64,000 bases of DNA from Stylophora pistillata (GCF_002571385.2 NW_019217919.1:230265-294264), one strand, 5' to 3'. Counted from the stretch's first letter, positions 51,409 through 64,000 are shown. Numbers and translations are program-made. The notes: generated by a model from the sequence alone, not told the origin.

Positions 51409-54400
51409 TTAGCTGTTAGAAGGTGAATCTGAGTCTGCTTCTTTGCTTAAGATAACTTTCCTGTAAGGATCTTCGGTAGAGTAACCTTCAGTCTGAAAAT
51501 TATGATGTGAATAGTCCCACGCCTGTCCGTAATCGTAATTACTACACCCATTATAATAATCAGAACAATTCCAATATGCCTCTGAGGTTTGACCATTTTC
51601 ATTGTTGCTGTATTCAGAAAGCTGAGTGGTTTCTTCATCACTTTTCTTTGTGTTTTCAGGATAGAGAGCCTCTACTTTCTTGAGGGCTTCGTCTAACCTC
51701 GTACAATCTGTGTAAACATTTTGGAGAACCTCGGCCTAAAGAAAAAAAATATAGTTATAATTTGGCGATAGAATTATCAAGACATTTTCAGTAGTTAATT
51801 TACTCAATATTTCGTAAAAAAAAAACCCTTCTTAATTGTTGAAATGTAACAAAATCTAAGAATAAATAACTTAAAACATTGAAATGAATGAGAGGAATTC
51901 AGTTAAGTGTTTGATAATCAGTAATTAACAAGATCAGAGGACCGCGTCGCTATGTCCAATGCTTCAATACCAATAAGACGACTGCTTCTAGTGTTCCATC
52001 GGTGAGGCGTGATTATTTGAATAAACGTTCTTAATGCGCTGGGCGGAACATTAGTAAAATATTCTGTGCCGGTTATGCTATTTCAGGTTATAACCGGGAG
52101 CAGAGAAAAGTCGTTTTTAAAACAGTATCTGAAGTTGACGGAACGATTGCAAAATTTTTTAAACGTTTTCCTCTAAATCAATCATTACCAATGTATGTTT
52201 CAGTGGGGAGATTGAAAAATCTTTGAGACTTAATAATTAAATGATTACAACTCTCTGGTGGATTTAAGTGACTGCTATACCTGCTCAACTTGCTCCCTTG
52301 TCAAAGGGCCGGATTCCACAGGGTACTGATTGTCTGTGTTCGGATAAGGCCCTGTTACCTGAGCACCTGATGGCTGAGTGGGACGTGACAGAGCTTTCTG
52401 AAGTAACCCTCGTTCTGTGGCCGCCTCAAGCACTCTATGTTTAGATCGCAACAACTCCTGAACGAACATGAAGCAAATTTTAGTTTAAAATTTTCCATCA
52501 TCCACCTTAGACTTTTACAGAATTCCGTCTCTCTGTTTTTTCTCACCAACTCAAAAAGAAGAGAAAAGATGCCTAGTTTAACAGTAGCTGACAAACAGAC
52601 TAGTAATGAGCTAGTGGAGTACCTCTCTTCGTGCTTTTGGATTCGGATCGTCGTAAGCCCACCGTACATTCAGCAACTCTCTGTTGTCCAGCTTTTGATC
52701 TGACATGGCAATCTAAAGAAACAAATAATCTGACATGGTTTTCTTATAAAAGTGCAAACTGCATTGTAACTCATTAGCTATTGTCACAGGCTCTCTGCAT
52801 TTATGGCGTTATTTTATTTTTCAACATAATTTTTCTGCAGGAACTTATCTTTCCAAAGCAAGGACTATCCACCAAACCCACAAAAATTAAATCTTAACAC
52901 ATTTTTATGTTACACGACAAATGACGGACAGCGCACAGGAGAAAAAGATAACCTATCATTGAACTCCTTTCTCTCACCTTCGCAAATTCAGCATTTACTC
53001 TGTTCTTGTAACGTACAAATGCTATGTTGCGTTTGTGTATTATTCTTATGTCCTGCAGAATTTGTATAAAACAAAAACAATTACTTTTAAAGTACCAAGG
53101 CAATTTTAAGTCCATGTCCACTGAGAAAAATTCACCACAAAATCAATGGGTGAGAAAAAAAACTTAAATTTAAAACCAATTCAAATGTTTTTTTCTCACT
53201 TTAATTGTTTGAGAAATAAAAGGTCAATAAACTTCAAACCAAAGTTCAGCATATCTAGAAAATGTACTTCAAAAAAGCATCACTATTTTCTAACCCCGTA
53301 TTCTTTTGATAAACAATTTATTTTGTATCAATTTAACTATAAGCCACCTATTTGTTCAAATTAGTCATGCAATTCTAACATGTCCAACTTAAAGAGATGC
53401 CTGAAGAGCATAAAAATGTGACATTAACCTCAATTTCACCCCACTCCCCAAACTCCTTCCACAAAAGTTTCTCCAGAGTTGTTCGACAGCCCAGGCCTCC
53501 TACGTAAAGTGTTCTACATTCTTTGTCAAATGTACCAACCCCTCCCATGTCTTCCTTGTGAAGTCGATGACGTTCTCGGCCAAAAACATCATGGGCTAGA
53601 TCGATTCTAGATAAGTTAGGAAAGCAAATTCCATTGTTAAACCTCTGCCTAATTAAGACACGTTCAATATAACATCCATCTGATATGGCTAGTGTGTATC
53701 ACTACAAATGTACAACTCAGTCAATGTACACCTGCTAATAACTTTATTATAATTATAAGCATGCTAATATTATTACCACTGACCTCTTATCATCTTTATC
53801 AGTAGGTATAACATGCAGATAACCACATTCAGAACCCAGATGACAAGAGCCTTTGGCAAAATAAATGCAGTAATAATGCTTGTTTCCACCAGGATCATAA
53901 ATATTTGCCTTGGTGAATCCTGCATCTGTTTCTATGCAGCATTTCGTCTCCGATGGCCCTATTACAAAACAAGTGAAAAAGGTTACGCAGTTTCTAGTCA
54001 AGTCTTAAGTTTCTCTCTTTCTCTTGATAGCCTAGCAAATGTTGTTTCATAATTGCCACTCCACTGAAAAAAAAATTCAGTCTTACACTTGAATACTTGA
54101 ATAGATCTGTTGCAATTGAATGTGTTGTATATATCTCCCATTTCAATTTCTGGCTTTGTTTCCACACTTCCCTTTTCCTATTTACTCCTCTTAACTTCTA
54201 CGCTGTCCTAATAGCCCTTATCGCATTTGTGTCTGCAATGCAAAGGGTCCACGGAGTTACAGTTTCAGGACAAGGTTAGCAGGTCAATGTTTCTCGAGAA
54301 ACACCAGAAACACTCTATGTCTGATCGTATAACTCTAGAATCTGCGTTTTTCTCTGCCGAGGAAAAGGTTAAAATTCTTAGTGGTAATTGTCCTGGCATC

Positions 54401-56159
54401 ACGAAAGGAAAATTGAAAGAATGGTTGTAATTTTAGAAAGAAATGGCAAAATTTTGTCGCGTTTGTTCATGACTACGGTTATTGTTTCTTTGTTGGCCTT
54501 TTTGAGGTTTAACTCAGAGTCACGTTTCAAGGCCCTAAGCGCCTTGCGTTTGGCTGGAAGCAAATTATCTTTTGGCTTTGTAATTTCTATTTCTGAAAGG
54601 TCACTTTTAACCTCTTCTAAATAGCTTTCAAGGGCTACTGATTTTTGCATTCGTGGTAACCATGTAGATTTGACGTGGCAGGGATGGGTTTTTTTTGTCT
54701 TCCCCTCAGAATGTGTAAATCAGACGCATTCTCCTTGTGAACTGATCAAAGTCACCCAATAGTTCTTGTCTGATCTGTTTTTGTTTTGTAGTGGGTGTTG
54801 GAATGAATTTAAGCCCTTTTGTCAGTAAATTAATCTGGTCGTTTGTAAGTTCTTTATTTGAGAGGTTTTTTATGTGCGTTTTGTTCGCCTCTAGTTTGAT
54901 AGTTGAGCATGTTTGGCAAGACCACGGTTTCGATCCTAATCTTGTGGATCTCATCAGTTGCTGATTCACTGAATAGACTGTTGCACCCGTACGCAATACA
55001 ATGTCTAACCATGACGAGAGCACACTGTATCCTTAAGAAAATGAATAAAAATGCCTCCAAACGTAGCTGCCTGCTTCGATTTTACTTGAAAGTTTTACCT
55101 GTGTGACCCGATAACCTCATTTCGAAACTTCAAAGTCTGCTGAGCTCTCGTACAGTGGGCGTAAATGCAATAAGGGCTATTCATCACTCCTTTTCATATA
55201 AACCCTTTCCACTTAAAGTAGCAGTATAGGGATTTTTTTTCTTCTCAAAGTCCTTCTCTTGTTGACTTTTTTGTTTCGGAATCTATCCACGGAATATTAT
55301 TTGATAACACTTCCTTTCTAATACATTGATTCTTTCAAGATAGTCTTTCTAAGTGTCCATGCCTCACACCCTTGTGTACTCATGGAGTAGGTAACCAATC
55401 CCATGGCAAACATCCATGTTTAAGAAATGTCCAGGAAGTATTTGGGCTTCCCTTTCCCAACCCCTTCCTAAGAGATAGCACTAAATAATATTGCTTCAAA
55501 CCATGTGAAGCCCTGATATTACAGCGGTTAGGGTTAGGGAAAGGAACATTGGGGGCTCGCATGGCTAGAAGCAATGTTACCCAATGCATTCCCTTCCAAG
55601 GTGTCAGAAGTCTTTCTCATCACTAACCGTGATCTTTGTCGTTCCGCCAGTGTTCTCCTACCCATCGATCGTACCATATATTGTACTCTGTGGCCCCTTC
55701 GGGAATCCAGTGCAACTTTTCTTTTTCTTCAGGATCGATCTGTCGACGAGCTGGCCTCGTTAGCAGTCTCTCAACCTTAGCTTCTAAATCAGTGGCAGTT
55801 TGTTTTACATTTTCCTTCGGATGATCATTGTTCGTTGTACCATCTGCTGTTCCGTTATAAAATCCTTGATAATAATATTGGTTCGCTGGAATAAACAGAG
55901 GATGAATAGAATCCCACTCAGTCGGTTTCTCCCATTGAGTTCTATAATCGCTAATGTTTTGATAGTAGTAGAGTCCACTATTCCAGTCGAACATAGCTAT
56001 CCAAGGACCGCGTTGTTCGTAAAACTGTGGGAAAAATGAAGAATCCGTGCTATGAACAGTCGTTTTTTCGTGTGTTGTTGTAGTTCCCTGCCTTTTAGGC
56101 TGCAAAGTTGATATATTTTCAAGATCAATGTCATCCTCTACCTTACGTTTGGCCGCCAT
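51409..56159 (-). CDS. CWC2: Cwc2/Cwf2-type pre-mRNA splicing factor (Torus/CCCH + RRM) with N-terminal WW domain, 517 aa
   Basis: Exons 56159-55628, 53958-53784, 53606-53429, 53052-52978, 52712-52623, 52457-52281, 51735-51409 (1554 nt, in phase). Motifs PARRQ, YNIWYDRW, CIYFAKGSCHLGSECGYLH, DVFGRERH..EDMGGVGTF, RTLYVGG, NAEFAKIAMSDQ, VRWAYDDPNP. Confidence 0.9.
54210..55181. mobile_element. Composite: TIR element with a THAP-like start, containing a Penelope 5' fragment (-)
   Basis: TIRs AATAGCCCTTATyGCATTT at both ends, loosely extending ~70 bp. MVRHCIAYGCNS starts at 55012 (-). PLE N-terminal motifs NLSNKELT..LLTKGLKFIP and LKKANKETITVVM at ~54890-54450. Confidence 0.75.
54916..54961 (-). 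ncRNA. Minimal type I hammerhead ribozyme
   Basis: (-) GCAA-CTGATGA-GATCC[ACAAGATTA]GGATC-GAAA-CCGTGG-TC^TTGC: canonical core, 5-bp stem II, 4-bp stem I, GUC cleavage triplet, directly 5' of the Penelope ORF remnant. Confidence 0.85.
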
Positions 56160-56957
56160 GTTTAACTTTGACCGCGAAGCCGCTGACCGTTTTTGTGCAA
56201 GGCGGCTGCTCGCTGTTGCTGTTATCAAATGAACTGCTCGCGGCGTGTTACCTCTTCCAAGTACAGAATGAATCTCCTGATTTCCTGTACAATTCACAAA
56301 AATTCCTAGATGAATGAAAAATTTAATATTCCTTATATAAAGAGGGGGGAAGGAGCTATTATGTGATATAGGATTAAGTGTTTTTTTAGTTTTCATAACC
56401 AGTGAAAATAAGAAATTAAAACCCCGAGGACTGTGAAGCATTAACTTTAAGGTTGTTTAAGGATTTTCCGTGATACATTATTTCTACTTTTTGATGCACA
56501 TTAAATGTGAGCAGGACCCCACTTTACCACTATACAAAGGTTGGATTTATTGCCATTAAAAATAATTGTTTTTCTTTCTTTTCAAGGATAGTCATACTTG
56601 AAACATTTTTTTTATTTTTCCCAATTTAGATCATGTGCTTCTACTGCAGTGATTTTCAGTGAGCAGAGACTGCAAAAATGTTCAACTAATAAAATTAAGG
56701 GAGAGGGGTGCACTGCAAGGATAACATTGTCAAACATCTTTAGGTTTCACATTCCCACACATTGGCATCTCTGTTTTCATCTACTTGTTCAGCTGTTTAC
56801 TTATGAATTGGTTTGTTTAGTTATTTATAAAACTAATAATCACCCTATTAAAATTTGAAAAAAAAAATTCTGAATCACGGTTTGATCCCTTTTTCCAAAA
56901 CAATGACAGCAGCTTTCCAAAGGGGTCTGTTTTTAAAATAAAATTGTATTTTATTCC

Positions 56958-58640
56958 TCAGAAACCACCATTTATTTTTCTTACACCAATAAGCTTATCT
57001 GTACTCAGAAGTTGTGATATGCATTGCAAGACACTCTGCCAGAGCAAGAATTTTCCTTGAAGAGGCTCAAAAATCTCACACTCTTGAGGATTTAATGATG
57101 TACCTGTCTTTGAATCTATCCCTAACAACAATCCATCTTTCTTCCAAGACCACTCCATCTCATTCAAACAGTAAATGAAGTTTTCCTTTTGATGAGACAT
57201 GGAAAATGAATTTTGATGGAGGAACCTTGGTATGGTTTGCAATGCACTGCTCAGGATTTCCAAAGCCTGTGATAAATTTGAGTCTTTTGCACACTGAGAA
57301 ATTTTTTTCAAAGAAAAATTTAAGGCCAGTTCACATGCACCAGCACCTGGAAGAAAGAGTAACTTCCTTCCATCTTTGCTAAAAGACATTTTGATACATT
57401 TTAGTGCATGGTGAAGGGCAATGTAATACTGCTTACATAATCCTTGTGCTGGAGAACAAAGCAGTATGCTGCAAGGAGAGAATTTGCAGCTTGATAAATC
57501 GAACTCAAGCTGGACAAATCTATGATGACCTGTTATGTGAAGATCACACGAAACACCCTTTCCAACAAAGAGTTCTGATAGACTGTCTTCACCAACATTG
57601 TTGATGGCAAGCATTCCTGTACACTTGCATATGTAGTTGACATACTCCTGAGGAATGTTGCTAACTACAGCAATGCCATACTGCCTGCAGAAATGCAAGG
57701 CTAAGTCTGGTACATCCTCTGAGGACAGAATCAGTTTAATTTTATGTTCATGAAATGTGGTGATTACTTTTTCTACTTGGTTTCTTTTCCACTGAACACT
57801 TAAAAATAAAATGGTTTTATCATTCATTTGAATTGTTGATGATGTCTGTGGTCCCAAGAAGTCAAACCTACAGTTCATGATAACAAACATGAATGCATGA
57901 GAAGTTTTAAGCACTCCTTCTTGTTCAGTGGAAAATCCACGTGGTATTATTATTCCAGTTTTCAAATGGGAAGAATAAACTGGAACACCAGGAATTTCTA
58001 TACAGATCTGAGCAAATTCATCAATTACATGTAAAAGTGAGTCCTGCAGGGAAACAGCTGATGATTTCCAAGTATCCATAACAACCTGGCAAAGAAGTTC
58101 AACAAAGTTCGAAACCAAACTGGACGGAAATTTTCCATTAAGCGTTGTGATAAGAAGTCTAATCATTCTCTGTTTTATAAGCGAGGAATCCTCGGCCTTG
58201 ACATCCGTAGTTACTGCGATCCCGTTCAGAACTGAAGCAACAACTTCGTGTTCAAGTAAGTTTGATTCAAGTTTGTAAAAAGCTCGAGATAAAGCGACTA
58301 AAGTTTGTCTTGGGTGAATTGATAAAGTTTCGTTGGGAACATAATTATCTCTCATTCCTGTAATAGAAACAACTTCCCGTAGAACTGATGATAAAAGCAA
58401 CACGAATGACGTTGCGCCGTCTCCAGAGATTGAGGAGAAGGAAACAATTTTGTCGACAATAGTTCGACCGATAGGATTTTCTATATTCAAGGATCTCAAA
58501 ATTAGCGCACCATTATTGGTAACAAGTGTTTCTCCTGAAGATGAATTCAGCATGACATCAAGTCCGTTCGGTCCAAATGTTCCCTTCAAAATCCCTTCCA
58601 AAGTCTCACAAACTTTGAGCGCTTCTTCTGGGACCGCCAT
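56958..58640 (-). CDS. BBS10: Bardet-Biedl syndrome 10 chaperonin-like protein, single exon, 560 aa
   Basis: Group II chaperonin-like with N-terminus ALKVCETLEGIL..FGPNG..GETLVTNNG..ENPIGRTIV..GDGATSF. The GDGA motif in place of GDGT(T) matches BBS10 better than CCT subunits or MKKS. ATG at 58640. Confidence 0.85.
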   Translation of the reverse strand: MAVPEEALKVCETLEGILKGTFGPNGLDVMLNSSSGETLVTNNGALILRSLNIENPIGRTIVDKIVSFSSISGDGATSFVLLLSSVLREVVSITGMRDNYVPNETLSIHPRQTLVALSRAFYKLESNLLEHEVVASVLNGIAVTTDVKAEDSSLIKQRMIRLLITTLNGKFPSSLVSNFVELLCQVVMDTWKSSAVSLQDSLLHVIDEFAQICIEIPGVPVYSSHLKTGIIIPRGFSTEQEGVLKTSHAFMFVIMNCRFDFLGPQTSSTIQMNDKTILFLSVQWKRNQVEKVITTFHEHKIKLILSSEDVPDLALHFCRQYGIAVVSNIPQEYVNYICKCTGMLAINNVGEDSLSELFVGKGVSCDLHITGHHRFVQLEFDLSSCKFSPCSILLCSPAQGLCKQYYIALHHALKCIKMSFSKDGRKLLFLPGAGACELALNFSLKKISQCAKDSNLSQALEILSSALQTIPRFLHQNSFSMSHQKENFIYCLNEMEWSWKKDGLLLGIDSKTGTSLNPQECEIFEPLQGKFLLWQSVLQCISQLLSTDKLIGVRKINGGF

Positions 58641-59085
58641 GTTGAACTTGAGCCGTCTTTCCTTACAACCTTTGGCCAGCGTTGTTTCAAGTCCAAAGCT
58701 CCCGGATTTGAAACAGAAATGGCCGTCATTACTTTTGTTCGAAAGGCGCGAGATTTTCTTTGAAAAACTCAACAACAACAGTAGATGTTGTCGTTGAAGC
58801 TGTCTCGCACGCAAAACGGCTTCGCTTAACTCTATACAGCTCAGGATCAACCTCGTCGCCGAACTACTAACTAACGTGTTGTGTTTCTTCTCGTTGCGTC
58901 ATCGGCTCAATCTCATGTCAAACTTGATTGTTCTAAAAGTCACACCGGCCAGGAGTGTTGCTGATATTCGGCGTAGGGTAAAATATAATTGCTTATGAAG
59001 AACCACTTTCCATTAAGGTGTAGTCGACGTTAATATCCACATGGAATATGATACGACCCTTCATCAGCTGTGTTTTTTTGTGTGT

Positions 59086-62744: not shown

Positions 62745-62967
62745 ATACCTACATTACTTGACCACTCCCCATAGGGGCTTTTCAGGGCCAATTCCCACCC
62801 ATCCCACCCCAGGGGAGGACATCCACCACACAGTAATCTTGTGCGTGGGAAATTAACGTCTCCTACCCCTAACCCTGCTGGAGACAGGGCCTACGGTTTA
62901 TTCGTCCTTATCTGAGAAGACTAGAATATCTATCCATTTTTTGATCATAGAAAGGTAGCAAATTCTC
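62745..62967 (-). mobile_element. tRNA-derived SINE (family A), head lost in the gap
   Basis: Body matches the other copies and also shows an extended 3' end (GGCCCTGAAAAGCCCCTATGGGGAGTGGTC on -). Confidence 0.8.
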
Positions 62968-64000
62968 NNNNNNNNNNNNNNNNNNNNNNNNNNNNNNNNN
63001 NNNNNNNNNNNNNNNNNNNNNNNNNNNNNNNNNNNNNNNNNNNNNNNNNNNNNNNNNNNNNNNNNNNNNNNNNNNNNNNNNNNNNNNNNNNNNNNNNNNN
63101 NNNNNNNNNNNNNNNNNNNNNNNNNNNNNNNNNNNNNNNNNNNNNNNNNNNNNNNNNNNNNNNNNNNNNNNNNNNNNNNNNNNNNNNNNNNNNNNNNNNN
63201 NNNNNNNNNNNNNNNNNNNNNNNNNNNNNNNNNNNNNNNNNNNNNNNNNNNNNNNNNNNNNNNNNNNNNNNNNNNNNNNNNNNNNNNNNNNNNNNNNNNN
63301 NNNNNNNNNNNNNNNNNNNNNNNNNNNNNNNNNNNNNNNNNNNNNNNNNNNNNNNNNNNNNNNNNNNNNNNNNNNNNNNNNNNNNNNNNNNNNNNNNNNN
63401 NNNNNNNNNNNNNNNNNNNNNNNNNNNNNNNNNNNNNNNNNNNNNNNNNNNNNNNNNNNNNNNNNNNNNNNNNNNNNNNNNNNNNNNNNNNNNNNNGTTT
63501 TTTGTGTGTGTTGTATTCCTCTTACACACACTTTATGGGAGCAGTTTGATGCTCAGATAAGACTGTACAAAATTTTGAAAACTAGAAGCCAAAAAGACTA
63601 GAAAATGAAATAATAGAAGAATAGTAAATCCCTTATTTGATGGTTTAACATATGATATAAGAGGACATTTGGCAAGTTGGGTTGTATTTTTCCCAAGTCC
63701 AGAGGGGCAATGAAAATACGAACAACTTGCAAAATTTCTTGGCATGTGATAAATTGAGCCATTAAATAAGGTGTATAGATTACACAGAACATGAATTATG
63801 TAAATGTTGTTGTGTAAGTTGAATTTCAGACCAAAATGATTCCAAACTAGTTTGAGAAATTTTTTTACTTCAAAAGTCCTTTGAAACTAGTTTGAACTCA
63901 TTTTAGCCTGGAGACATTTTAATCTGTGACTCAAATACTTGTAAATGTTGTTTGGCTATATAAGAGTACTGATCTGCTAATTTTTGTTAAAAGCCAGGTT

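What the first reader, a model, noticed from the sequence alone, without database searches (positions are those of the whole stretch)
51409..56159. A fungal-type Cwc2 spliceosome factor in an animal, fused to a WW domain
Seen: an intact 7-exon gene with the Cwc2/Cwf2 signatures (NIWY..W, C-x7-C-x5-C-x3-H, FGRE....EDMGG.G.F, TLYVGG, NAEFAK.AM.DQ, WA.DDP.P), preceded by a WW domain (W..YYY..TQWEKP, ~56009-55921). Established: yeast Cwc2 contacts U6 snRNA at the catalytic centre, while human, fly and worm spliceosomes use RBM22 and lack a separate Cwc2; yeast Cwc2 has no WW domain. Inference: this lineage kept an ancestral Cwc2, probably alongside RBM22, and the WW module could link it to proline-rich splicing factors or the Pol II CTD. 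That points to an alternative NTC-related spliceosome configuration in early-branching animals. Introns with host-type repeats and animal neighbours argue against contamination.
Basis: partly seen in the sequence, partly recalled or inferred. Interest (0 to 1): 0.8.

Follow-up and report, generated by a model that had tools for sequence, protein, structure and literature searches.

The report
Coral WW-domain Cwc2 splicing factor gene
This is a real, expressed coral gene for a Cwc2-family splicing factor carrying a WW domain, but the WW-Cwc2 design is ancient, found in many protists and non-bilaterian animals, and already auto-annotated as "cwc2-like", so it is a lineage that bilaterians and fungi lost, not a new fusion.

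Summary
Observation confirmed. A 7-exon, 517-codon gene lies on the minus strand (ATG 56159, stop 51411-51409). All six GT..AG introns are confirmed to the base by poly(A) RNA-seq contigs and raw reads. It encodes WW + Torus/CCCH + RRM.

Interpretation partly supported.
- The protein is Cwc2/Cwf2-like, not RBM22-like: an orthologue scores 1e-57 against Cwf2 and 1e-11 against RBM22.
- The genome also has an RBM22 gene on contig C11.
- No bilaterian orthologue appeared in three large protein searches.

Two parts of the interpretation do not hold.
- The WW is not a coral or animal novelty. WW-Torus-RRM proteins occur in corals, an octocoral, Nematostella, Trichoplax, the sponge Sycon, a choanoflagellate, ichthyosporeans, oomycetes and ochrophytes, and Vitrella. 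Cryptophytes carry the WW at the C-terminus. NCBI and UniProt already name them "cwc2-like" or "cwf2-like".
- The window gene is not the "fungal-type" copy. A second, intronless Cwc2 gene on contig C44 groups with fungal Cwc2 (100/98 support). The window gene groups with holozoan and stramenopile WW forms.

Cwc2-type and RBM22-type proteins already coexist in solved S. pombe spliceosomes (Cwf2 and Cwf5), so a novel spliceosome configuration is not needed. Verdict: new member of a known kind, with a modest evolutionary point.

The parts
55628..56159 (-). Exon 1 (532 nt, ends in phase 1): start codon at 56159, disordered N-terminus, WW domain, linker, and the start of the Torus domain (RPARRQ...YNIWYDRWVGEHW)
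   Evidence: Pfam Torus on residues 134-174, 30.6 bits against a cut-off of 29. 73% identical to the Oculina orthologue N-terminus. Junction 55627|53957 seen in RNA.
55923..56003 (-). WW domain (residues W53 to P79: W..D..SGLYYYQN....TQWEKP)
   Evidence: Pfam WW E=0.0099, 16.3 bits, below the cut-off of 26.9. The same columns hit PF00397 in 9 of 12 clade members, best 1.3e-9. W53 and P79 are invariant and W76 nearly invariant across 25 sequences. AlphaFold2 gives three strands at pLDDT about 90. Foldseek top hits are almost all WW domains: Pin1, PRPF40A, FBP28, FE65.
53784..53958 (-). Exon 2: Torus core with the CCCH zinc finger (C-x7-C-x5-C-x3-H)
   Evidence: Pfam Torus 3e-16, 60.4 bits; zf_CCCH_4 5.8e-5. 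Junctions seen in RNA.
53429..53606 (-). Exon 3: end of Torus/connector (FGRERH..DMGGVG.F) and RRM RNP2 (TLYVGG)
   Evidence: PDB Cwf2 4.7e-12, Cwc2 2e-7, RBM22 only 0.11. Junctions seen in RNA.
52978..53052 (-). Exon 4: RRM RNP1 (NIAFVRY) and NAEFAK
   Evidence: Pfam RRM_1 E=0.01 on 25 aa. Orthologue P0121 RRM_1 9.7e-11. Junctions seen in RNA.
52623..52712 (-). Exon 5: end of RRM and the WAYDDPNP motif
52281..52457 (-). Exon 6: helical region and the conserved YPNTD.QY motif
   Evidence: The motif is shared with stramenopile, amoebozoan and coral C44-type proteins.
51409..51735 (-). Exon 7 coding part and stop codon: conserved C-terminal helix (..TRLDEALKKVEA..), low-complexity tail, DPYR motif, TAA at 51411-51409
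56160..56287 (-). 5' UTR (at least this far)
   Evidence: The RNA contig of run X7 reaches 56287.
51300..51408 (-). 3' UTR (continues beyond the stretch that was laid)
   Evidence: RNA depth continues to 51300 and contigs run over the end of the stretch.
54200..55180 (.). Dispersed host repeat (about 970 bp) inside intron 1, read at high depth mostly from the opposite strand
   Evidence: At least 40 copies at 88-95% identity on many contigs of the same genome. Depth and variants.

Best explanation
The locus is the coral orthologue of an old eukaryotic 'WW-type' Cwc2: an N-terminal WW domain, then the Torus domain with its CCCH zinc finger, an RRM, and a conserved C-terminal helix.

Shown:
- The gene is intact, transcribed, polyadenylated and spliced exactly as modelled.
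- It is single-copy and conserved across Anthozoa, Placozoa, a calcareous sponge, a choanoflagellate, ichthyosporeans, SAR groups and cryptists.
- It belongs to the Cwc2/Cwf2 family, not to RBM22.
- It coexists in this genome with RBM22 and with a second, intronless, fungal-type Cwc2 gene.

Inferred:
- Like Cwc2/Cwf2, it acts as an NTC-related spliceosome protein. Its Torus/zinc-finger/RRM unit would hold U6 snRNA and the intron near the catalytic centre. RBM22 would play the Cwf5/Ecm2 part, as in S. pombe.
- The WW domain is an added docking module for a proline-rich partner. Candidates are the very proline-rich RBM22 tail of this genome, or other proline-rich splicing proteins.
- Fungi lost the WW form, and bilaterians lost Cwc2 altogether.
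For: - Gene structure and expression.
- Family assignment. Torus 60 bits on one exon. Exon 3 against Cwf2 4.7e-12, against RBM22 0.11. Orthologue P0121 against Cwf2 1e-57, Cwc2 2e-30, RBM22 1.4e-11. P0121 Torus 5.4e-32 and RRM 9.7e-11.
- Orthologues and database names: NCBI 'pre-mRNA-splicing factor cwc2-like' in Montipora and Acropora, 'cwf2-like' in Dendronephthya, 'Pre-mRNA-splicing factor cwc2' in Trichoplax; Sycon; Stephanoeca; Sphaerothecum.
- The same N-terminal WW-Torus-RRM order in oomycetes: WW 75-101, Torus 135-244.
- Tree: the holozoan WW clade has 98/98 support and is sister to the stramenopile WW clade (98/89). The split from fungi + Monosiga + the coral C44 type has 100/98.
- AU tests.
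- Core identities: animal WW type against stramenopiles 49.8%, against fungi 45.0%, against the same genome's C44 type 41.6%.
- WW fold.
- RBM22 gene in this genome.
- Cwf2 and Cwf5 chains occur in the same PDB entries, 3jb9 and 9esh.
- Single copy of the WW type in the genome.
Against: - No functional data exist for any WW-type Cwc2. Spliceosome association, U6 binding and the WW ligand are all inferred from fungal homologues.
- The window's own WW scores below Pfam's gathering threshold (16.3 against 26.9 bits).
- The AlphaFold2 model of the full orthologue was poor over the Torus domain (pLDDT below 50), so the compact Cwc2 fold was not verified.
- The tree is unrooted because no RBM22 outgroup protein could be obtained. 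The age of the split between the two Cwc2 types is therefore uncertain.
- Opisthokont monophyly is rejected only at p=0.015, and the group was named after the tree was seen.
- Absence from bilaterians rests on ranked hit lists (120-150 rows), not on genome searches.
Confidence: 0.75

Rival explanations
1. One reading: a fungal-type Cwc2 retained in early animals that newly acquired a WW domain, creating a lineage-specific spliceosome configuration.
For: Best PDB hits are fungal Cwf2/Cwc2, because only fungal structures exist. Yeast Cwc2 lacks a WW. No bilaterian orthologue was seen.
Against: WW-Torus-RRM in the same order occurs in oomycetes, ochrophytes, Vitrella, a choanoflagellate, ichthyosporeans, a sponge and a placozoan. 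The tree separates the window gene from the fungal clade with 100/98 support and puts another gene of this genome (C44) with the fungi. Cwc2-type and RBM22-type proteins coexist in S. pombe spliceosomes.
Confidence: 0.05
2. The WW-type protein has diverged in function from canonical Cwc2. With RBM22 and a fungal-type Cwc2 also present, it may serve a specialised or regulatory role, for example a subset of introns, the minor spliceosome, co-transcriptional coupling, or a non-spliceosomal RNA process.
For: Three related genes are present in one genome. The WW type has its own conserved extras: the WW, a C-terminal helix, and a DPYR tail in place of the acidic L.xYxSSDDE tail of the fungal, amoebozoan and C44 types. 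The coral genome has many U12 introns according to earlier unchecked notes.
Against: The RNA-binding core is highly conserved, about 45-50% identical to fungal and stramenopile proteins. The zinc ligands and RNP motifs are intact. Most WW-type lineages show no second Cwc2 in the lists, so there the WW type is probably the only Cwc2 and does the canonical job.
Confidence: 0.18
3. Contaminant or recent horizontal transfer: the gene belongs to a fungus or protist associated with the coral.
For: Corals carry eukaryotic symbionts. The nearest non-holozoan relatives are stramenopiles.
Against: Intron 1 holds a dispersed repeat with at least 40 copies across the host assembly. The flanks hold animal-type genes on a large scaffold. 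Orthologues with the same exon joins exist on chromosome-scale records of Oculina, Montipora and Acropora. The holozoan sequences form one clade, but its internal branching is unresolved and animals are not recovered as a group.
Confidence: 0.01
4. It is a divergent RBM22/Slt11 homologue rather than Cwc2.
For: The zinc finger and RRM of the orthologue P0121 align weakly to RBM22 (1.4e-11).
Against: No STL11_N domain is found in any exon. The genome's only STL11_N match is a separate gene on C11 that hits human RBM22 at 4.5e-27. Cwf2 scores 150 bits higher than RBM22.
Confidence: 0.01

Closest known systems
S. pombe Cwf2 (Prp3) / S. cerevisiae Cwc2, NTC-related splicing factors (PDB 3jb9, 9esh, 5gm6, 3u1l)
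   Same: Torus domain with a CCCH zinc finger, connector, and RRM with the same RNP motifs. About 45% identity over the roughly 210-column core. Orthologue E-values 1e-57 (Cwf2) and 2e-30 (Cwc2).
   Different: Fungal proteins have no WW domain, carry an acidic C-terminal L.xYxSDDE tail, and fall in a separate clade with 100/98 support. The coral gene has an N-terminal WW, a different C-terminal helix and a DPYR tail.
Oomycete and ochrophyte 'Pre-mRNA-splicing factor cwc2' (e.g. Phytophthora P0131, Pythium P0113)
   Same: The same N-terminal WW, then Torus, then RRM order. Shared signatures: EGA.EYNIWYD+..G.HW, LW..FGEWGE, WA[FY]DDPNP. Sister clade in the tree.
   Different: These carry an extra RanBP2-type zinc finger before the WW. 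Some ochrophytes add C-terminal WW domains. Uncharacterised experimentally as far as I could find.
The same genome's intronless Cwc2 paralogue (G000:C44, L001 1474-2625) and its hexacoral orthologues
   Same: Torus + RRM, Pfam 1.4e-28 and 8.3e-10. YPxTDxQY motif.
   Different: No WW and no introns. Only about 42% core identity to the window type. Groups with fungi and Monosiga. Carries the fungal-like acidic C-terminal tail.
RBM22 (human) / Cwf5 (S. pombe) / Slt11-Ecm2 (S. cerevisiae)
   Same: CCCH zinc finger and RRM distantly related to those of Cwc2. In human spliceosomes RBM22 is taken to replace Cwc2 and Ecm2 (PMC11833078, PMC13601561).
   Different: Defined by the N-terminal STL11_N zinc-binding domain, which the window gene lacks. 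Encoded separately in this genome on C11.
Spliceosomal WW-domain proteins Prp40/PRPF40A and WBP4 (FBP21)
   Same: The window's WW gives its closest, though non-significant, PDB sequence matches to Prp40 and WBP4 WW domains (E 0.27). PRPF40A and FBP WW domains are among the structural matches.
   Different: These are unrelated proteins of early (U1/B-complex) stages. The similarity is confined to the 30-residue WW fold and says nothing firm about ligand class.

Membership tests
Cwc2/Cwf2 family (Pfam Torus PF16131 + RRM) | Torus domain above Pfam's gathering score | tested here: met
   Exon 2 alone scores 60.4 bits and exon 1 30.6 bits, against a cut-off of 29. Orthologue P0121 scores 111 bits over profile positions 3-109.
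Cwc2/Cwf2 family (Pfam Torus PF16131 + RRM) | CCCH zinc finger embedded in the Torus domain (C-x7-C-x5-C-x3-H) | tested here: met
   CIYFAKGSCHLGSECGYLH read directly in exon 2. zf_CCCH_4 5.8e-5. The ligand columns are nearly invariant in 25 sequences.
Cwc2/Cwf2 family (Pfam Torus PF16131 + RRM) | RRM directly after the Torus/connector, with RNP2 LYVGG and RNP1 (I/V)AFV.Y | tested here: met
   TLYVGG in exon 3 and NIAFVRY in exon 4. RRM_1 E=0.01 on the 25-aa exon and 9.7e-11 in orthologue P0121.
Cwc2/Cwf2 family (Pfam Torus PF16131 + RRM) | Closer to Cwc2/Cwf2 than to RBM22 by sequence and by tree | tested here: met
   (Cwf2 1e-57 against RBM22 1.4e-11). It lies inside the Cwc2 tree, but in the WW-type clade, not the clade that holds fungal Cwc2/Cwf2.
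Cwc2/Cwf2 family (Pfam Torus PF16131 + RRM) | Torus, zinc finger and RRM forming one compact folding unit, as in the Cwc2 crystal structures | tested here: inconclusive
   The AlphaFold2 model of orthologue P0121 had pLDDT below 50 over residues 133-265, the Torus domain. Only the WW and RRM were confident. No fold comparison was attempted on it.
Cwc2/Cwf2 family (Pfam Torus PF16131 + RRM) | Binds U6 snRNA and the intron in the activated spliceosome and contacts Prp19 | not testable with these tools
   Needs IP-MS, CLIP or cryo-EM.
RBM22 / Slt11 / Cwf5 | N-terminal STL11_N domain (PF21369) | tested here: not met
   No match in any exon. The only STL11_N match in the genome is on C11; that exon hits human RBM22 at 4.5e-27.
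WW domain (PF00397) | Two Trp 20-23 residues apart, central aromatic cluster, Pro three residues after the second Trp | tested here: met
   W53, Y64-Y66, W76, P79. W53 and P79 are invariant and W76 nearly invariant in 25 sequences.
WW domain (PF00397) | Pfam profile score above the gathering threshold | tested here: not met
   The window's exon 1 scores 16.3 bits against a cut-off of 26.9, E=0.0099. The homologous segment passes in relatives: 9 of 12 at E<=0.01, best 1.3e-9; Phytophthora scores 43.7 bits.
WW domain (PF00397) | Three-stranded antiparallel beta-sheet fold | tested here: met
   AlphaFold2 strands 53-58, 63-68 and 74-75 at pLDDT about 90. Foldseek top hits are almost all WW domains, rmsd 0.8-2 A, probability 0.9-0.99. 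E-values are 0.3-1, as expected for about 30 residues.
WW domain (PF00397) | Binds proline-rich or phospho-Ser/Thr-Pro peptides | not testable with these tools
   Needs peptide arrays, pull-downs or NMR.

The most novel reading that the evidence does not exclude
Cwc2 exists as two lineages that split before opisthokonts diversified. One is a WW-type, kept in Holozoa, SAR and Cryptista and lost in fungi and bilaterians. The other is a WW-less 'fungal type'. Hexacorals keep both, plus RBM22. That would give three related U6/intron-binding NTC-related proteins, with the WW-type tethered through its WW domain to a proline-rich spliceosome partner such as the RBM22 tail. Non-bilaterian animals would then run a catalytic-core protein set richer than either yeast or human.
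Probability: 0.3. Interest if true: 0.6.

Novelty: new member of a known kind. Interest (0 to 1): 0.38.

Why it matters
Spliceosome papers usually say that metazoan RBM22 stands in for yeast Cwc2 and Ecm2 (e.g. PMC11833078, PMC13601561). This locus and its relatives show that this holds for bilaterians, not for animals as a whole. Corals, an octocoral, Nematostella, Trichoplax and a sponge keep a true Cwc2 beside RBM22, as S. pombe does.

Two further points follow. The ancestral holozoan form carried a WW domain. The gene alone is an ordinary orthologue that automatic annotation has already named.

The added value is evolutionary: two deep Cwc2 lineages, their loss pattern, and a testable idea about what the WW docks to. 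I found no paper describing WW-type Cwc2 or animal Cwc2.

Tried and rejected
- Joined protein left out. Exons were searched one by one, and natural orthologues returned by the tools (P0121 Oculina, P0118 Dendronephthya and others) served as full-length proxies.
- No outgroup. I could not obtain a full-length RBM22 protein id. The length window of the word search excludes it when the query is a single exon. The Cwc2 tree is therefore unrooted.
- Full-length structure. The AlphaFold2 model of P0121 from a 12-row alignment was too poor over the Torus domain. I ran no fold search on it.
- Foldseek on the exon-1 model gave no match at E<=0.001, but the list was almost entirely WW domains.
- Literature. 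Combinations of Cwc2 with metazoa, cnidaria, WW domain, LECA, and 'cwc2-like'/'cwf2-like' found nothing on animal or WW-type Cwc2. The last search was swamped by CWC22/24/25/27.
- Rfam found no RNA gene in 50000-58000.
- Other weak Torus matches in the genome (C146, C698, C273) are unrelated CCCH proteins or fall below the cut-off.
- Rejected readings: retrocopy origin of the C44 gene from the window gene (AU p=0.0003), RBM22 identity, and contamination.


Full report
**What is there**

On the minus strand of the window there is a seven-exon gene:
- E1 56159-55628
- E2 53958-53784
- E3 53606-53429
- E4 53052-52978
- E5 52712-52623
- E6 52457-52281
- E7 51735-51412, stop 51411-51409

All introns are GT..AG and the reading frame is 517 codons.
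- the WW signature (W53 ... YYY ... TQW76EKP79, about 56003-55923)
- YNIWYDRWVGEHW
- the CCCH finger CIYFAKGSCHLGSECGYLH (C-x7-C-x5-C-x3-H)
- FGRERHRLHKEDMGGVGTF
- TLYVGG
- NAEFAK / IAMSDQ
- WAYDDPNP

Exons were analysed one at a time. Natural full-length orthologues returned by the tools served as proxies.

**Is it real and expressed?**

Single exons already give significant family matches:
- Pfam Torus 3e-16 on exon 2 and 5.5e-7 on exon 1.
- Exon 3 alone hits S. pombe Cwf2 at 4.7e-12 and S. cerevisiae Cwc2 at about 2e-7 in the PDB, against 0.11 for RBM22.

Public poly(A) RNA-seq runs hold about 0.37-0.46 of the sampled words of the 5-kb stretch. That is about what the exons plus UTRs would give.

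I laid two contig sets and two raw-read runs on the locus.
- All six junctions appear at exactly the modelled coordinates, as CT..AC on the plus strand.
- One 1514-nt contig runs fully spliced from 51580 to 56287.
- First mates lie on the plus strand, as expected for a minus-strand mRNA in a stranded library.

Intron 1 carries a roughly 970-bp dispersed repeat with at least 40 copies at 88-95% identity on other contigs of the same assembly. The upstream neighbour is an intronless TCP-1/cpn60-family ORF. Earlier notes on the window list animal genes such as NCOA5 and NELFCD (unchecked). Contamination can be dismissed.

**What family?**

The Oculina patagonica orthologue (P0121) is 74-96% identical to each of exons 1-6 of the window and 57% to exon 7. 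It has identical exon joins. Its PDB scores are 1e-57 against S. pombe Cwf2, 2.6e-58 against another fungal Cwc2-type chain (9l5r), 2e-30 against S. cerevisiae Cwc2, and only 1.4e-11 against human RBM22. Pfam gives Torus 5.4e-32 and RRM_1 9.7e-11. No exon has the STL11_N domain that defines RBM22/Slt11/Cwf5. The protein is a Cwc2/Cwf2-family member, not an RBM22.

**Does the genome also have RBM22?**

Yes. The only STL11_N match in the 398-Mb assembly is on contig C11. The surrounding 10 kb contains exons for the RBM22 N-terminal zinc-binding region, its CCCH finger, its RRM and a very proline-rich tail. One 48-aa exon hits human RBM22 at 4.5e-27, then S. pombe Cwf5 and S. cerevisiae Slt11 more weakly.

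**A second Cwc2 gene**

A search of the whole genome for Torus domains found a stronger hit than the window, at G000:C44:868529-868858. It is an intronless 384-codon ORF with a full Torus domain and RRM but no WW.

Its orthologues are conserved at 47-88% identity in stony corals (Pocillopora, Montipora, Desmophyllum) and in unnamed sequences. A partial Nematostella model is 63% identical. The WW-type gene of the window is single-copy.

**The WW domain**

The window's WW scores below Pfam's threshold (16.3 bits, E=0.0099). The evidence that it is nonetheless a real WW is:
- The homologous segment passes in 9 of 12 clade members, best 1.3e-9. It scores 43.7 bits in Phytophthora.
- W53 and P79 are invariant and W76 nearly so across 25 sequences.
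- AlphaFold2 on exon 1 with that alignment gives a three-stranded sheet at pLDDT about 90.
- Foldseek's best matches are almost all WW domains: Pin1, PRPF40A, FBP28, FE65, FBP11, FBP21, Prp40. Their rmsd is 0.8-2 A and probability 0.9-0.99. E-values are only 0.3-1, as expected for about 30 residues.

The nearest WW sequences in the PDB are the spliceosomal Prp40 and WBP4 WW domains, but not significantly (E 0.27).

**How widespread is WW-Cwc2?**

I ran three searches: a word search with the Dendronephthya orthologue, a full HMMER scan of 1.84 billion representatives with a holozoan WW-Cwc2 profile, and a profile word search.

The best hits are:
- stony corals: Oculina; Montipora and Acropora, which NCBI names 'pre-mRNA-splicing factor cwc2-like'
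- the octocoral Dendronephthya ('cwf2-like')
- Nematostella
- Trichoplax ('Pre-mRNA-splicing factor cwc2')
- the sponge Sycon
- the choanoflagellate Stephanoeca and the ichthyosporean Sphaerothecum (identified)
- Chromosphaera Nk52, going by its EukProt label
- a few unnamed holozoan-like sequences

Next come scores of oomycete, ochrophyte, chromerid (Vitrella) and cryptist proteins. Most carry PF00397 + PF16131.

In Phytophthora the order is RanBP2 finger, WW (75-101), Torus (135-244), RRM. That is the same N-terminal WW placement as in the coral. A cryptophyte has its WW at the C-terminus instead.

About 581 cluster representatives match at E<=1e-30. Only five score above 390 bits. No sequence named as bilaterian appears in any list.

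This supports loss in Bilateria. It is not proof, because only the top 120-150 rows are shown and no animal genomes could be searched.

**Phylogeny**

I built a careful IQ-TREE (LG+C20+F+G4 PMSF) of 49 sequences on 210 core columns, from RPARxQ to DPNPxA, so the WW columns are excluded.

The tree splits with 100/98 support into two groups:
- (I) fungi + Monosiga + the coral intronless C44-type
- (II) Amoebozoa + [cryptophyte + (stramenopile WW clade + holozoan WW clade)]

The holozoan WW clade has 98/98 support and contains the window's orthologues.

AU tests:
- Forcing all holozoan sequences together is rejected (p-AU 0.0003). The C44 gene is therefore not a retrocopy of the window gene.
- Forcing all opisthokont sequences together is rejected more weakly (p-AU 0.015). 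That group was named after the tree was seen.

Mean core identities agree:
- animal WW-type against stramenopiles, 49.8%
- against fungi, 45.0%
- against the C44-type of the same genome, 41.6%
- C44-type against fungi, 49.9%

Signature residues agree too. KGVAFV, WAT.DPNP, IV..HF.EWG and the acidic C-terminal L.xYxSSDDE tail are shared by fungi and the C44-type. EGA.EYNIWYD..G.HW, LW..FGEWG and WA[FY]DDPNP are shared by holozoan and stramenopile WW types.

The tree is unrooted because I could not obtain an RBM22 protein to use as outgroup. The split could be a pre-opisthokont duplication. It could also be an older-looking artefact of faster evolution after WW loss. Ancient transfer of the C44-type cannot be excluded, given its patchy distribution (hexacorals and Monosiga only, in these lists).

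Correct:
- It is a Cwc2, it sits in an animal beside RBM22, and bilaterians appear to lack it.

Not correct:
- It is not 'fungal-type'. That label fits the C44 gene.
- The WW is not a new fusion. It is the widespread, probably ancestral, state outside fungi and Amoebozoa.
- An 'alternative spliceosome configuration' is not required. Solved S. pombe spliceosomes (3jb9, 9esh) and 9l5r contain a Cwc2-type and an RBM22/Cwf5-type chain together.

The simplest view is that RBM22 corresponds to Cwf5/Ecm2, that early eukaryotes had both proteins, and that bilaterians lost Cwc2.

**Likely mechanism**

Shown: the gene is intact and expressed, the Torus/CCCH/RRM core is conserved with zinc ligands and RNP motifs in place, and the WW fold is conserved.

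Inferred from the fungal homologues (established knowledge from the Cwc2 crystal structures and yeast cryo-EM entries listed):
- The core contacts U6 snRNA and the intron near the catalytic centre and links to the NTC.
- The WW docks to a proline-rich partner. The RBM22 tail of this genome (PPPLPPPP, PPPPGGYPPPPPP, PPGPPP) is an attractive neighbour, since Cwc2 and Ecm2 adjoin each other in yeast structures. This is speculation.

A rival reading is that, with three related genes present, the WW-type has a specialised role. I give that about 0.18.

**Novelty and score**

RefSeq and UniProt already label the orthologues as cwc2/cwf2-like, so the gene is a new member of a known family.

I found no paper on animal Cwc2, on WW-type Cwc2, or even containing the strings 'cwc2-like' or 'cwf2-like'. 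Structural papers equate RBM22 with Cwc2 plus Ecm2 for non-yeast organisms (PMC11833078, PMC13601561). The two-lineage picture and the loss pattern are therefore a modest, publishable-as-a-note evolutionary point. They are not a new kind of system. Interest 0.38.

**Limits**
- The full-length AlphaFold2 model was unusable over the Torus domain.
- Assembly gaps (runs of N) in the window were left alone.
- No step needed referral.

Noticed in passing
G000:C44:868502-869653 (L001 1474-2625, + strand): Second Cwc2 gene of this genome: an intronless 384-codon ORF with Torus + RRM and no WW, and an acidic fungal-like C-terminal tail. It is conserved in stony corals and Nematostella. It groups with fungal Cwc2 and Monosiga (100/98), not with the window gene. 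Its origin is open: an old paralogue with many losses, or an ancient transfer.
   Followed up: partly
G000:C11 about 355000-361000 (L008, minus strand): RBM22 gene of this genome: STL11_N, CCCH finger and RRM exons, and a very proline-rich C-terminal exon (L008 4141-4551) with PPLP-like and PPGPPP motifs. This tail is a candidate ligand for the WW domain of the window's protein.
   Followed up: partly
window 56958-58850 (minus strand): The upstream neighbour is a single long ORF (up to 630 aa) of the TCP-1/cpn60 chaperonin family (Pfam 1.1e-54). It is apparently intronless and looks like a chaperonin-like (BBS/MKKS-type) gene. Not analysed further.
   Followed up: partly
window 54200-55180 (intron 1): A dispersed repeat of about 970 bp with at least 40 genomic copies at 88-95% identity. 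RNA reads cover it at high depth, mostly from the opposite strand and with many variant letters, so they come from other copies. It holds a degenerate ORF (54706-55023) with an LS..E..LL.KGLKF.P.P motif typical of retroelement proteins (from memory, not tested).
   Followed up: partly
window 51399-51533: In both raw-read RNA runs, 4 reads each show a joint that 'goes back 135' (51533 to 51399, one extra A between). It spans the last 40 codons, the stop and 10 nt of the 3' UTR. It could be a tandem-duplication polymorphism lying in the 3' UTR of other individuals, or a template-switch artefact. The coding sequence up to the first stop would be unchanged.
   Followed up: no
related proteins P0043, P0049, P0051, P0201, P0225, P0220; P0178; P0238: Other Cwc2 architectures seen in the hit lists. 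Torus-RRM with a C-terminal SAM domain occurs in unnamed metagenome/transcriptome sequences, which cluster with Planoprotostelium (Pfam SAM confirmed for P0049; the Planoprotostelium C-terminus looked SAM-like by eye only). A cryptophyte form has a CCHC knuckle at the N-terminus and a WW at the C-terminus. One 3638-aa protein has 27 WW-like stretches.
   Followed up: no
window about 49640-50150 and 62945-63500: Runs of N (2502 N in the window).
   Followed up: no
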